Below, piece by piece: positions 9,010-53,410 of a stretch of 53,810 nucleotides of DNA. Under the pieces are notes generated by a model. That model was not told where the DNA came from. It ran no database searches and was given only the letters and a program-made list of their open reading frames with translations. Source of the DNA: Octopus bimaculoides. Its lineage: Eukaryota. Every line of letters starts with the position of its first letter. Position 1 is the stretch's first letter. Location: NCBI RefSeq assembly GCF_001194135.2, contig NC_068993.1:543375-597184 (forward strand). The letters are read 5' to 3'. Position numbers and translations under genes: made by a program.

Positions 9010-9204
9010 CCGAACATTCTTCCATTTGACTGTCTTCTGTTCTGCTGTGTGAGCCAAAAGCAAATTCTTGATGGATGCAACTGTATTTGTAAAAGACTTT
9101 GGACTTGGGAAAATGTTAAAAGGTGGAGGAACTGTGGCTCCCTCTGCAAAGTAACTTATCCAGAGTCTGGAACGAGCAAATTTCCATTCTTCATCAGCTT
9201 GGCT
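9010..9204 (-). CDS. TRPC: TRPC TRP-box exon [37 protein letters not shown]...KWKNVR
   Basis: EWKFAR and PPPFN motifs. Acceptor aattcag at 9205-9207, donor gtgagt at 9009, 195 nt, phase 0-0. Not in the supplied ORF track as a whole. Confidence 0.96.
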
Positions 9205-19855: not shown

Positions 19856-20051
19856 AGATATTATTTGGTATGAGTTGCTCATCATAGCAATTAGCATGTT
19901 CAGAAGTACAATTATGGCTATCAAACTGTAACTGCCAAACATCAATTTCCCAATAAGCTCAGTGAAATGGTGAGGTTCTTTCAGATGGGCATCTTCCAGA
20001 TCAATAAGACCATAAATTGCCCAATATAAACTCTGCAAGATCTCAAAAAGA
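19856..20051 (-). CDS. TRPC: TRPC pore/S6 exon, copy C (intact): LFEILQSLYWAIYGLIDLEDAHLKEPHHFTELIGKLMFGSYSLIAIIVLLNMLIAMMSNSYQIIS
   Basis: Acceptor cttttgcag at 20052-20054, donor gtaaga at 19855, 196 nt, phase 2 in and phase 0 out. Confidence 0.93.
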
Positions 20052-20111
20052 CTGCAAAAGAAGCAGAATATAAGTTATGATCAATAAGGAGAAAGTAAAA
20101 GACTTTCTTAC

Positions 20112-20306
20112 AGATATCATTTGATATGATAGTGACATCATAGCAATTAGCATATTGAGCAATACTATAATTGCTATCATACTCTAGCTTCCAAACATCA
20201 GTTTGCCAATCAGCTCAGTCAGTTTGTGTGGTTCATCCAAGTGAGCGTTGTCCAATTCTATAAGGCCGTAAAAAGCCCAATTAAACTCTGCAAGATTTCA
20301 AAAAGA
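20112..20306 (-). pseudogene. TRPC: TRPC pore/S6 exon, copy B: disrupted pseudo-exon or poison exon
   Basis: Paralogous to A and C, with intact acceptor ttctttccag and donor gtaaga. 195 nt because of a 1-nt deletion near 20281 (tttaattgg vs tttatattgg). TAG at 20186-20184 where A and C have TAC. Confidence 0.88.
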
Positions 20307-21615: not shown

Positions 21616-21811
21616 ATAGATGAGTTGGTAGGAATTGCTCATCATAGCGATAAGTAAGTTAAGCAGAATAATAATGGCTATCATACTGTAACTGCCAAAC
21701 ATCAGCTTGCCAATCAGTTCGGTCAGTTTGTGCGGTTCATCCAAATGTGCGTGTTCTAGATCGACAAGGCCATAAACTGCCCAATATAAACTCTGCAAAA
21801 TCTCAAAAAGA
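21616..21811 (-). CDS. TRPC: TRPC pore/S6 exon, copy A (intact): LFEILQSLYWAVYGLVDLEHAHLDEPHKLTELIGKLMFGSYSMIAIIILLNLLIAMMSNSYQLIY
   Basis: Acceptor ttctttccag at 21812-21814, donor gtaaga at 21615, 196 nt, same phases as copy C. Confidence 0.93.
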
Positions 21812-27222: not shown

Positions 27223-27572
27223 TTTGCAAAACTTCTGTATTTGATATCACATGAATGCGTGACACCAGCCTCACATTCTTCTGCTCGGAGAGCAGCGTAG
27301 TACCAGTAGAGATGGTTCAATCCACAGGCAAAGGAGAAGAGTACGAGGAAATATACTGATATAAACTTGACAATATCTGCCACCATTCGACCAAGGGAGA
27401 TCTGTAGAGGTCCCAGGTGGGGATTTATTGTGAAAATATAGATTAATTTTAAGGAACTGAAAATATTGGCACCAGCAAACAAGGCTTCTGCAATAAGGTT
27501 TGGATCATAAGCATCCCAGTGTTTTCGTTCTTCATAAGCATAAGGGTTGTTTTCAGCTCTCTCATGGTACAC
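27223..27572 (-). CDS. TRPC: TRPC S4-S5 exon (WDAYDPNLIAEALF...HLGPLQISLGRMVADIVKF...SFAN)
   Basis: GPLQISLGRM motif. Acceptor catttcag at 27573-27575, donor AA|gtaagt at 27222, 350 nt, ends in phase 2. Confidence 0.96.
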
Positions 27573-40851: not shown

Positions 40852-41109
40852 ATGTTATAATGAAAACCACAAGTCTTGTTAAATACAGCTATCTAGGGTC
40901 TGACTTTGGAGAAGATTTTCCATTTGACATGGTGCAGCCTCCTGGCTTCCCAGACCCCAGTCGAACCGTCCAGCCCATGCCAGCATGGAAAATAGACATT
41001 AAACGATGATGATAATGATTGTAATTGATCCTTTCATCTTTAAGCCTCCAGATTAAAGCTGAAAGGGTCTTTGAATGTCATAGTGCCTTAAATTCGAAAG
41101 ATGGTTGTT

Positions 41110-41420
41110 TTATCTGGATTTAAATTTTCCTTCCATGTCTGGCAACAGGACTCTGCACCATGCCGCAGAAGCAGGAGAACCCAGCCATGGCTGTCAGACA
41201 ATTTCTGCGACCATATCACCCCTAACAACTGGCCACCTAACTCCTCAGACTGCAACCCCCTTGATTATTATGTGTGGGGCACAGTTGAGTAAGTGACCAA
41301 CAAAACTCCTTGTAACACCAAAGATGAACTGAGTGCAAGAATTATGGCAGCATTGACCAACTTAAACAAGAAGACTGTCCTGAAGAGTTGCAGGAGATTC
41401 CAAAGTCGTTTGAAGGCCGG
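41110..41420 (+). mobile_element. Tc1/mariner transposase C-terminal relic (maT/DD37D-like)
   Basis: WQQDSAP and WPPNSSDCNPLDYYVWG correspond to the QQD.AP and WPP.SPDLNP.DY..W catalytic motifs. A stop follows VE. Confidence 0.85.
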
Positions 41421-47324: not shown

Positions 47325-47539
47325 ATAATCCTTTCTGTTATAGGCACAAGGCCTGAAATTTTGGGGGAGGGGACAAGACAATTACATCAACCCCAGTATT
47401 TCACTGGTACTTAATTTATTGACCCCAGAAGGATGAAAAGCAAAGTTTCTCGGTGGAATTTGAACTCAGAACATAGCAACAGATGAAATACTGCTAAACA
47501 TTTCACCTAGCATGCTAATGATGCTGTCAGCTTGCTGCC

Positions 47540-47545
<6 letters not shown>
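47325..47545 (-). mobile_element. tRNA-derived Nin-like SINE
   Basis: Same family as 35870-36050, with an (AAT)n tail on the plus strand. Confidence 0.7.
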
Positions 47546-47574
<29 letters not shown>

Positions 47575-47960
47575 TTAACATCTGTTGTCCATGCTGGCAT
47601 GGGTTGGACGGTTTGACTAGGGCTGGTAAGCTGGAAGGCTACACCAGACTTCAGTCTGATTTAGCATGGTTTTCTATGGACCTTCCTAATGCCAACCACT
47701 CTGAGAGTGTAATAGGTGCTTTTATGTGCCACTGGCATGGGTGCCATTTGCATGACACCAATATCTGCTACAACTGCACTTTTGCTTGGCTTGATGGGTC
47801 TTCTTCTCAAGCACAACATAATGCCAAAGGTTTCGCAGGTCCAACACTCAAACGGTGCACTTAAGCTACTGGCATGGATGCCAGTTATGTGGCACCAGCA
47901 TCAGCAATGACCATGATTTCACTTGGCTTGACGGGTCTTCTTCTCAAGCACAGCATATTA
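47545..47960 (-). mobile_element. (GAT)n-tailed retroposon with an internal duplication
   Basis: (CAT)n, then ttaacatctgttgtccatgctggcatggg. cttggcttga.gggtcttcttctcaagcaca occurs twice. Confidence 0.75.
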
Positions 47961-52404: not shown

Positions 52405-53284
52405 CTACACACACACGTACACACACCAGTAGGTAAGAGGGGAAGAATCGGTATCATCAGCTGCCGGAACAGACAGACATTCTCTGCCATTCTCACAAAT
52501 ATTTTTATCAAATTTTTCAAACTAATTACAAACAAATACAAATTGTTTTCTCTGGAAATGCAACTTTAGAAATCTTTTTTTATAAATTCAACATAAAAAA
52601 AAAATTCTTTTTATCTCATTCTTCATCTTCTGGCTTTTTTTCTTTATTATTTTTTCTCACTTCTTTTCCTCCTCTCTCACTTTCTCTCCCTCTCAGACAC
52701 ACATGCATACACAAACAAATGCACACACATTCATAAAATAATAATTGTTATTGGCCAGAAGTTGGCTGATTATTTCAAATGGTTCTTCATTTTATTAACC
52801 CTGGAGAGATGCAAAGGGAAGTTGACTTCAGCAGGATTTGAACTCCCAGTGTAATGCACTGGAATAATTACTGCAAGACTCTAACCATGTCTGCAAGTTC
52901 TTCTCTAAAACTTCTACAGATTCTGCATTCAGAACAAACTTACCAATATACAAGCATTGTCAAAGGTCATGGCTTGGAAGGCTGCAATAAACAAGAGCCT
53001 GACAGCTCCCTATTTGTACATTAAATCTTTTATTGAATTCCTTGCTGTCCCTCAACCTGCAGACTTCACCTTTGCCCATGAGCCCCACCTCCTTTGCCTT
53101 CACAACAGTCCGTAATGATACTGCAGCTGACACTTTCCTCAATCATATAACCGCTTATTAAAGTAAACAGGCTGCACACTGGCCTCGACAGTTTATGTGT
53201 CTCACTGACCCCCCCCCCCCCAATGGACTTGCTGCTTTCTCCAACTCCACATACTTAATTGCTTGGGCTTCCATACTGGCCTCT

Positions 53285-53410
53285 CTCTAGAAACTCTGCC
53301 AAATCAGATTGGAGCCTGGTGTAGCCTTCTGGTTTCACCAGTCCTCAATCAAATCGTCCAACCCATGCTAGCATGGAAAGCGGACGTTAAACGATGACGA
53401 TGATAGTGAT
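53285..53410 (+). mobile_element. (GAT)n-tailed retroposon 3' end
   Basis: Nearly identical to 30340-30460. Confidence 0.8.

What the first reader, a model, noticed from the sequence alone, without database searches (positions are those of the whole stretch)
20112..20306. Third pore exon was conserved as protein, then broken: recent pseudo-exon or poison exon
Seen: copy B keeps a strong acceptor and donor but lacks one T near 20281, which puts TAG in frame at 20260-20258. It also has TAG for TAC at 20186-20184 and SLSYQ for the conserved SNSYQ. Against copy A, I count about 24 synonymous codon differences and about 10 replacements. Over AHLDEPHKLTELIGKLMFGS there are 8 synonymous changes and no replacement. 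Inference: B was a functional third pore variant under long purifying selection and lost function recently, or is polymorphic. With splice sites retained, it could now act as an NMD-triggering poison exon that tunes channel level.
Basis: partly seen in the sequence, partly recalled or inferred. Interest (0 to 1): 0.72.

Follow-up and report, generated by a model that had tools for sequence, protein, structure and literature searches.

The report
Broken third pore exon, octopus TRPC
An octopus TRPgamma/TRPC channel gene has three tandem alternative exons encoding its pore, and the middle one carries a frameshift and a stop codon; it looks like a recently dead exon copy, which is ordinary for duplicated exons, and nothing here shows it is a regulatory 'poison' exon.

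Summary
On the minus strand lies a TRPgamma-type TRPC gene. It is from Octopus: published O. maya alphaTRPC qPCR primers match perfectly. Three tandem homologous exons, A (21811-21616), B (20306-20112) and C (20051-19856), sit between the S5 exon (donor at 27223) and the TRP-box exon (9204-9010). Each encodes the pore helix, selectivity filter and S6.

A and C are open and 196 nt long. B is 195 nt. It has a 1-nt deletion (between 20282 and 20281) that puts TAG in frame at 20260-20258, and a second TAG at 20186-20184.

A versus B gives 24 synonymous and 10 replacement codon differences (dN/dS about 0.04). Changes unique to B fall mostly on third codon positions (6 versus 14; neutral expectation rejected, p = 9e-4). 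So B was a selected coding exon for nearly all of its history and broke late.

SLSYQ is not a sure lesion: that position is His in fly TRPgamma.

The poison-exon idea is untested. B keeps strong splice sites and any inclusion gives a premature stop, but no transcripts or sister-species sequences were reachable.

Frameshifted or stop-bearing copies in mutually exclusive exon clusters are already documented (Dscam). Modest interest.

The parts
27223..27572 (-). Constitutive exon upstream of the cluster. It encodes the S4-S5 linker, S5 and the turret, and ends ..RSFA + AA|GTAAGT, so the next exon supplies the third base of a codon.
   Evidence: ORF and donor read. It aligns to TRPgamma and TRPC4/5. 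The O. maya alphaTRPC qPCR amplicon lies at 27491-27375.
21616..21811 (-). Pore exon copy A (196 nt, intact): N|LFEILQSLYWAVYGLVDLEHAHLDEPHKLTELIGKLMFGSYSMIAIIILLNLLIAMMSNSYQLIY. It encodes the pore helix, selectivity filter and S6.
20112..20306 (-). Pore exon copy B (195 nt, broken), the subject of the finding. Its acceptor (tttttcttttctttccag) and donor (gtaaga) are retained.
20281..20282 (-). Site of the 1-nt deletion in B (TTTATATTGG becomes TTTA-ATTGG). It shifts the frame for the rest of B and for all downstream exons.
   Evidence: alignments; coordinates
20258..20260 (-). First in-frame TAG met when B is read from its acceptor. It lies 46 nt into the exon and 146 nt before B's donor.
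20184..20186 (-). TAG in place of the conserved TAC (Tyr of MFGSYS) in the homologous frame. This is the second, independent lesion.
20130..20135 (-). TCACTA (Ser-Leu) where A, C and four of the five complete outgroup copies have AGCAAY (Ser-Asn); L001 copy 2 has AGCAGT (Ser-Ser). All six bases differ, which suggests one multi-nucleotide event. This gives SLSYQ.
   Evidence: The position is His in TRPgamma and Asn622 in TRPC4.
20052..20111 (-). 60-nt intron between B's donor and C's acceptor. It is probably too short, or only barely long enough, to be spliced out, so B and C would exclude each other sterically.
   Evidence: coordinates. The parallel case in L001 has two intact copies only 28 nt apart. 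The steric limit itself is inferred from general knowledge.
19856..20051 (-). Pore exon copy C (196 nt, intact): ...YWAIYGLIDLEDAHLKEPHHFTELIGKLMFGSYSLIAIIVLLNMLIAMMSNSYQIIS
9010..9204 (-). Constitutive exon downstream of the cluster, carrying the TRP box: [19 protein letters not shown]...
   Evidence: Sepia alphaTRPC primers match it with 2 and 4 mismatches.

Best explanation
B is a recently inactivated pseudo-exon. It is the decaying third member of a cluster of three tandemly duplicated, mutually exclusive exons that each encode the whole ion pathway (pore helix, selectivity filter, S6) of an Octopus TRPgamma-type TRPC channel.

Shown:
- The three copies share position, length, splice phase and splice signals.
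- A and C are intact and evolve under strong purifying selection.
- B carries a frameshift and an independent nonsense codon.
- B's lineage-specific substitutions have the signature of a selected coding sequence.
- Skipping all copies, or including any two, gives an immediate premature stop, because the exon length is not a multiple of three.

Inferred:
- B once supplied a third pore variant. It has Glu instead of Asp next to the filter, and Phe at the end of the pore helix.
- B was lost recently.
- Because its splice sites are still consensus, B may still be included occasionally. Such transcripts would be unproductive noise removed by mRNA surveillance, not a tuned regulator.
For: - Gene identity: the draft protein hits Drosophila TRPgamma (PDB 9vqq) at E = 7e-241, then TRPC4/5. 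Pfam finds TRP_2, Ion_trans and Ank.
- Organism: O. maya alphaTRPC primers match 20/20 and 20/20, and the amplicon is the stated 117 bp.
- Exon anatomy and lesions. Exactly three copies exist.
- Selection: dN/dS is 0.04-0.08 in all three pairs.
- B-unique changes split 6 (positions 1+2) versus 14 (position 3), against A 5:11 and C 6:9. Neutrality is rejected at p = 9e-4.
- Repaired B aligns without gaps to TRPgamma 589-697 and TRPC4 559-665.
- All other exons of the gene are open.
- The same exon is tandemly duplicated, with both copies intact, in at least one other animal (L001). L004 and L005, two overlapping contigs of one assembly, carry an intact copy behind a first copy cut off by the contig start. 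A multi-copy pore-exon cluster is therefore normal for this gene family.
- Precedent: pseudo-exons with frameshifts or stops in mutually exclusive clusters, including Dscam exon 9.13, which is frameshifted in the fly reference genome yet seen in transcripts (PMC3228551).
Against: - There is no read-level, population or sister-species evidence that the two lesions are real and fixed.
- B retains a strong acceptor and donor. It also retains the nucleotide-level conservation of its first 32 nt shared with A and C. This is what one would also expect if the exon were still recognised for some purpose.
- The timing estimate rests on about 20 substitutions and saturated synonymous sites.
Confidence: 0.66

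Rival explanations
1. Regulated poison exon. B is kept because its inclusion (27223>20306 and 20112>9204 junctions) introduces a premature stop, and the cell uses it to turn down channel output. Vertebrate SCN8A exon 18N and SCN1A exon 20N work this way.
For: - Consensus splice sites are retained.
- Inclusion gives a premature stop 46 nt into the exon, with several exon junctions downstream.
- The exon's 5' 32 nt remain nearly identical to A and C.
- The gene is strongly regulated: it is eye-enriched and heat-induced in O. maya and Sepia (PMC13402157).
- A precedent exists in channel genes (PMC7790302).
Against: - B shows the signature of protein-level selection up to a very recent break, with only two clear lesions. 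A long-standing poison exon would be conserved as RNA rather than as codons.
- Retained splice sites are also what a young relic shows by default.
- No expression or conservation evidence could be obtained.
Confidence: 0.1
2. B is still a working third pore variant in the species. On this view the frameshift and TAG are a segregating null haplotype captured by the reference individual, or assembly or sequencing errors.
For: - The assembly is gapped (eight N runs, 933 N in the window).
- B's substitution pattern cannot be told apart from that of an exon that is still functional.
- Dscam exon 9.13 is a documented case of a reference-genome frameshift in an exon that is used in other strains (PMC3228551).
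Against: - B has two independent disabling changes within 100 nt, while A, C and every other exon of the gene are clean. Random assembly errors would not cluster like this.
- The deletion is not in a homopolymer.
- The copies are only 77-80% identical, so a collapse or mis-join between them is unlikely.
- There is no gap within 5 kb of B.
Confidence: 0.18
3. B never functioned. It only looks like protein because gene conversion from A or C keeps refreshing it.
For: The first 32-33 nt of all three copies are nearly identical (1-2 differences, against 23-26% elsewhere). Identity also varies along the exon: A-B reaches 90% in the middle third. Both are compatible with some past conversion.
Against: - Changes that are unique to B cannot have been imported from A or C, and they are themselves biased to third positions (6:14, p = 9e-4).
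- Synonymous divergence of B from both neighbours is saturated (pS 0.65-0.72).
Confidence: 0.04

Closest known systems
Pseudo-exons inside mutually exclusive exon clusters, e.g. Drosophila Dscam exon 9.13 (frameshift in the reference genome) and a stop-truncated Dscam exon in another Drosophila species (PMC3228551)
   Same: A tandem homologue of working alternative exons, with matching position and splice signals, disabled by a frameshift or in-frame stop. It represents a stage in the birth and death of duplicated exons.
   Different: Here the cluster has only three members and encodes a channel pore rather than an Ig domain. Whether B still appears in transcripts, as Dscam 9.13 does, is unknown.
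Vertebrate sodium-channel poison exons SCN8A 18N and SCN1A 20N (PMC7790302; 18N is spliced mutually exclusively with 18A according to the title of PMC3401437, a retracted paper)
   Same: An alternative exon in an ion-channel gene that carries an in-frame stop, so its inclusion yields no functional channel.
   Different: 18N and 20N are conserved between mouse and human and are developmentally regulated. For B, neither conservation of the lesion nor any inclusion has been shown, and B's codon-level conservation points to a young loss.
Alternative pore exons in invertebrate cation channels: NALCN alternative selectivity-filter exons (PMC3557258) and Lymnaea Cav3 exons 12a/12b (PMC9694082), as listed
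   Same: Alternative exons swap pore-lining sequence and so, presumably, ion selectivity. The two listed studies cover invertebrates, including the snail Lymnaea (Cav3).
   Different: Those are four-domain channels in which one domain's pore loop is swapped. Here a tetrameric TRPC subunit swaps its entire pore helix, filter and S6. No functional data exist for A versus C.
Drosophila TRPgamma and vertebrate TRPC4/5 (PDB 9vqq, 7b0s, 6aei)
   Same: Same protein family and architecture. The exon corresponds to TRPgamma residues about 596-661 and TRPC4 residues about 564-629, which include the FGL filter and the I617/N621/Q625 gate region (numbering counted from the alignment).
   Different: My searches of the open-access literature found no report of tandem alternative pore exons for TRPgamma or TRPC.

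Membership tests
TRPC channel (TRPgamma / TRPC1/4/5 clade, 'alphaTRPC') | TRP_2 domain, N-terminal ankyrin repeats and a six-TM ion-transport domain | tested here: met
   Pfam: TRP_2 1.9e-27, Ion_trans 1.7e-28, Ank_2 1.2e-8, all above the curated cut-offs.
TRPC channel (TRPgamma / TRPC1/4/5 clade, 'alphaTRPC') | TRP box EWKFAR immediately after S6 | tested here: met
   [15 protein letters not shown] in exon 9204-9010.
TRPC channel (TRPgamma / TRPC1/4/5 clade, 'alphaTRPC') | Closest solved relatives are TRPgamma and TRPC4/5 rather than TRPC3/6/7 | tested here: met
   TRPgamma 7e-241 and TRPC4/5 about 1e-225, against TRPC3/6 about 1e-150 to 1e-159. O. maya alphaTRPC primers match exactly.
Mutually exclusive exon cluster (criteria of PMC3228551) | Tandem copies within one intron interval, with sequence homology | tested here: met
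   A, B and C lie between the 27223 donor and the 9204 acceptor. They are 77-80% identical in nucleotides and 82-85% in protein.
Mutually exclusive exon cluster (criteria of PMC3228551) | Same exon length and same splice-site phase | tested here: met
   Lengths are 196, 195 and 196 nt. All copies start with the third base of a split codon after CAG and end before GTAAGA.
Mutually exclusive exon cluster (criteria of PMC3228551) | Each copy keeps the reading frame open | tested here: not met
   Met for A and C. B fails because of the frameshift and the TAG. B is therefore a pseudo-member and not a working member.
Mutually exclusive exon cluster (criteria of PMC3228551) | Transcripts contain exactly one copy | not testable with these tools
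   No transcript data were available. Indirect evidence: skipping all copies, or including two, gives an immediate stop. The B-C intron is only 60 nt.
Poison (NMD-coupled) exon | Inclusion introduces a premature termination codon upstream of further exon junctions | tested here: met
   In silico splice 27223>20306 gives ..LFEILQSLIGLFTAL*. At least two coding exons follow (9204-9010 and about 7130-6900).
Poison (NMD-coupled) exon | The exon is actually included in a regulated fraction of transcripts, and these rise when NMD is blocked | not testable with these tools
   No RNA data were available. Protein and contig look-ups found no octopus sequences.
Poison (NMD-coupled) exon | The stop-bearing state is conserved across species | not testable with these tools
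   No orthologous octopod sequence was reachable. The codon-level selection signature argues that the stop-bearing state is young.

The most novel reading that the evidence does not exclude
B is not mere debris. It would be a newly recruited unproductive-splicing switch in the eye-enriched, heat-inducible octopus TRPgamma gene. Either inclusion of B diverts transcripts to decay, or U1 binding at B's intact donor, 60 nt upstream of C's acceptor, governs the A-versus-C pore choice. That would be a poison or decoy exon caught just after its birth from a coding exon.
Probability: 0.1. Interest if true: 0.55.

Novelty: new member of a known kind. Interest (0 to 1): 0.3.

Why it matters
The cluster matters more than the broken copy. 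An octopus TRPgamma channel reported as eye-enriched and heat-responsive can apparently be built with at least two different complete pores (A or C). These differ in the residue after the filter glycine-leucine, in the charged outer loop and in S6. My literature searches found no report of this for TRPC channels.

Published expression assays for this gene amplify the S5 exon upstream of the cluster (27491-27375), so they cannot tell the pore isoforms apart.

B adds a dated snapshot of exon death. If its lesions are species-specific, it offers a natural experiment on how quickly splice signals decay once an alternative exon stops coding.

If B turned out to be a regulated poison exon, it would show such a switch being born directly from a coding exon. 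That remains unsupported.

Tried and rejected
1. Orthologous exon in sister species. A protein search with repaired B returned only 3 metagenomic or Logan fragments and no octopus sequence. Exact look-ups of the window ORFs that cover A and C found nothing. The metagenome scan gave three non-octopod loci. The key comparative test could therefore not be done.

2. Orthology of L001's two copies with B and C. Copies within a species resemble each other more than copies across species, so no orthology can be assigned.

3. Docking-site/selector RNA pairing, as in Dscam. The best partner of the conserved 33-nt exon start lies at about 18082-18031 (dG -24.7). However, 18 of 50 shuffled elements find an equally good partner (the earlier scan is; one search timed out). 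Rejected as unsupported.

4. Rescue of B by an alternative acceptor. The internal TTGCAG|AG site gives AA+A GTT TAA, a stop. No NAGNAG site is present. Rejected by reading.

5. Rescue by cephalopod A-to-I editing. UAG to UGG could remove stop codons but cannot correct a frameshift. Rejected; the reasoning is from general knowledge.

6. More decayed copies in the flanking introns. None were found.

7. SLSYQ as a third lesion. Downgraded, because that position is variable in the family (L001 copy 2).

8. Literature on TRPC or TRPgamma alternative pore exons. Nothing was found.

Full report
WHAT IS THERE

The window is AT-rich (27-38% GC), gapped eukaryotic DNA. The minus strand carries a multi-exon gene. 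Concatenating its open exon segments gives a protein whose best solved relative is Drosophila TRPgamma (PDB 9vqq, E = 7e-241), followed by TRPC4/5 (about 1e-225) and, well behind, TRPC3/6. Pfam finds TRP_2, Ion_trans and ankyrin repeats above their cut-offs, and the TRP box EWKFAR follows S6.

The qPCR primers published for Octopus maya 'alphaTRPC' (PMC13402157, Table S2) match the window 20/20 and 20/20, at 27491-27472 and 27394-27375. They span exactly the stated 117 bp. The Sepia officinalis primers match the TRP-box exon with 2 and 4 mismatches. The gene is therefore the TRPgamma-type TRPC of an Octopus, either O. maya or a close relative; I cannot tell which. That paper reports the gene as strongly eye-enriched and heat-induced.

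THE EXON CLUSTER

The upstream exon is 27572-27223. It encodes the S4-S5 linker, S5 and the turret, and ends ..RSFA + AA|GTAAGT. The downstream TRP-box exon is 9204-9010. Between them lie exactly three homologous exons:
- A, 21811-21616
- B, 20306-20112
- C, 20051-19856

Each begins with the third base of the split codon after a polypyrimidine-CAG acceptor and ends before GTAAGA. A and C are 196 nt and open. They encode LFEILQSLYWA(V/I)YGL(V/I)DLE..., that is, the pore helix, the filter and all of S6. This corresponds to zebrafish TRPC4 residues about 564-629, which include the I617/N621/Q625 gate stretch.

Because 196 is not a multiple of three, skipping all copies or including any two gives an immediate stop (..SF*). 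The A-B intron is 1309 nt. The B-C intron is only 60 nt.

The same exon is tandemly duplicated elsewhere. One Logan contig (L001) has two intact copies only 28 nt apart, which is too close to be spliced to each other. Two overlapping metagenome contigs of one assembly (L004 and L005) have an intact copy about 700 nt downstream of a first copy cut off by the contig start. Three other contigs have a single copy. Alternative pore exons thus recur in invertebrate TRPgamma-like genes. I found no report of this in the searchable literature.

CHECKING THE OBSERVATION

- B is 195 nt. One base is missing between 20282 and 20281 (TTTATATTGG becomes TTTA-ATTGG).
- Read from its acceptor, B gives LFEILQSLIGLFTAL*, with TAG at 20260-20258 and ten stops in all.
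- In the homologous frame, the Tyr codon of MFGSYS is TAG at 20186-20184.
- SNSYQ is SLSYQ (20132-20130).
- A versus B gives 24 synonymous-codon differences and 10 replacements. Over AHLDEPHKLTELIGKLMFGS there are 8 synonymous changes and 0 replacements.

One qualification applies. The Asn-to-Leu position is His in fly TRPgamma and Asn622 in TRPC4, next to the gate residue rather than at it. It is Ser in an intact copy in L001. It is therefore not a secure lesion. It belongs to a run of six consecutive changed bases (AGCAAY becomes TCACTA), which looks like a single multi-nucleotide event.

WAS B A SELECTED CODING EXON, AND FOR HOW LONG?

Nei-Gojobori dN/dS is 0.04 for A-B, 0.08 for B-C and 0.06 for A-C, with synonymous sites saturated (pS 0.64-0.72).

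The sharper test uses changes unique to one copy.
- B has 20, at codon positions 1, 2 and 3 = 4, 2, 14.
- A has 16 (4, 1, 11).
- C has 15 (6, 0, 9).

For B, six or fewer of 20 changes at positions 1+2 has probability 9e-4 under a neutral 2:1 split. Without the 5-nt cluster it is 3e-5. Changes unique to B cannot have been copied in from A or C, so gene conversion does not explain this.

B's own replacements are conservative. They include Asp-to-Glu at the acidic residue after the filter (GLID in TRPgamma). From memory, this corresponds to the Ca2+-selectivity Asp621 of Drosophila TRP; I did not check that here.

B shows no excess of position 1+2 changes over A and C. I therefore infer that it has been unconstrained for at most roughly 15-20% of its branch, and probably much less. 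This is a rough bound from about 20 substitutions.

IS B A POISON EXON?

What is shown is limited. B's splice signals are as good as those of A and C, and inclusion yields a premature stop well upstream of further junctions.

The first 32-33 nt of all three copies are almost identical (1-2 differences, against 23-26% elsewhere; Fisher p 0.004-0.02). This hints at a nucleotide-level constraint or local conversion. A search for a complementary docking site found nothing better than shuffled controls.

No transcripts, reads or sister-species sequences were reachable. A copy with two lesions and an otherwise codon-conserved sequence is what a young relic looks like. Known channel poison exons (SCN8A 18N, SCN1A 20N) are conserved between mouse and human and are developmentally regulated (PMC7790302). 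I give the regulated-poison reading about 0.1.

ERROR OR POLYMORPHISM?

Two independent disabling changes sit within about 100 nt, while A, C and every other exon are clean. The deletion is not in a homopolymer. The copies are only 77-80% identical, and no gap lies within 5 kb. All this argues against assembly error.

A segregating null haplotype cannot be excluded. Dscam exon 9.13, frameshifted in the fly reference genome yet present in transcripts, is a documented precedent (PMC3228551). [quoted passage not shown]

VERDICT

- B is best read as a recently dead member of a three-exon alternative-pore cluster in octopus TRPgamma (confidence about 0.66).
- Novelty: a new member of a known kind.
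- Interest is modest (0.3). Most of it attaches to the A/C alternative pores of a visually relevant, heat-responsive channel, not to the broken copy itself.

Noticed in passing
window 21811-21779, 20306-20275, 20051-20019 (minus strand): The first 32-33 nt of all three pore-exon copies are almost identical (1-2 differences), while the rest of the exon differs by 23-26% (Fisher p 0.004-0.02). The Leu codon TTA before TAY TGG is the same in all three window copies and in the four outgroup copies whose DNA I read (L001 x2, L002, L003). This may be a splicing enhancer, an RNA element or local gene conversion.
   Followed up: partly
window 20111-20052; L001 681-708: The intron between B and C is only 60 nt. 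In another animal's contig the two intact tandem copies are 28 nt apart. This suggests steric hindrance as the mechanism that keeps neighbouring copies mutually exclusive.
   Followed up: partly
L001 710-904: The second tandem exon copy in L001 is intact but reads SSSYINIS instead of SNSYQ. The Gln that aligns with the TRPC4 lower-gate residue Q625 is replaced by Ile, so functional copies can carry unusual S6 gate regions.
   Followed up: no
L004 2-46 and 738-935; L005 6-122 and 818-1015: Two overlapping contigs of one metagenome assembly (JAAUYA01...) carry two tandem copies of a related TRPC pore/S6 exon about 700 nt apart (LWEILQSLYFACFGLVD...SNSYEIIA). This is a further lineage with the duplication. 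The organism is unknown.
   Followed up: no
window 27491-27375: The published O. maya alphaTRPC expression assay amplifies the constitutive S5 exon. It therefore sums all pore isoforms, including any unproductive B-containing transcripts.
   Followed up: yes
window 41092-41289 (+): An ORF ending ...WPPNSSDCNPLDYYVWG resembles the C-terminus of a Tc1/mariner transposase. It gave no Pfam hit at E <= 0.01.
   Followed up: partly
window e.g. 3014-2895, 30563-30402, 33399-33208, 47464-47613, 53209-53394: An interspersed repeat occurs many times on both strands, inside and outside the gene's introns. Its translation contains ..HHRLTSAFHASMGWT...
   Followed up: no
window 8923-8615 (minus strand): A tandem repeat of about 45 nt (translated [15 protein letters not shown]...) begins about 90 nt downstream of the TRP-box exon donor.
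   Followed up: no
window 10267-9363: A long AAT/AAC-rich tract (poly-Asn in translation) is interrupted by a 410-N assembly gap, inside the 10.6-kb intron downstream of exon C.
   Followed up: no
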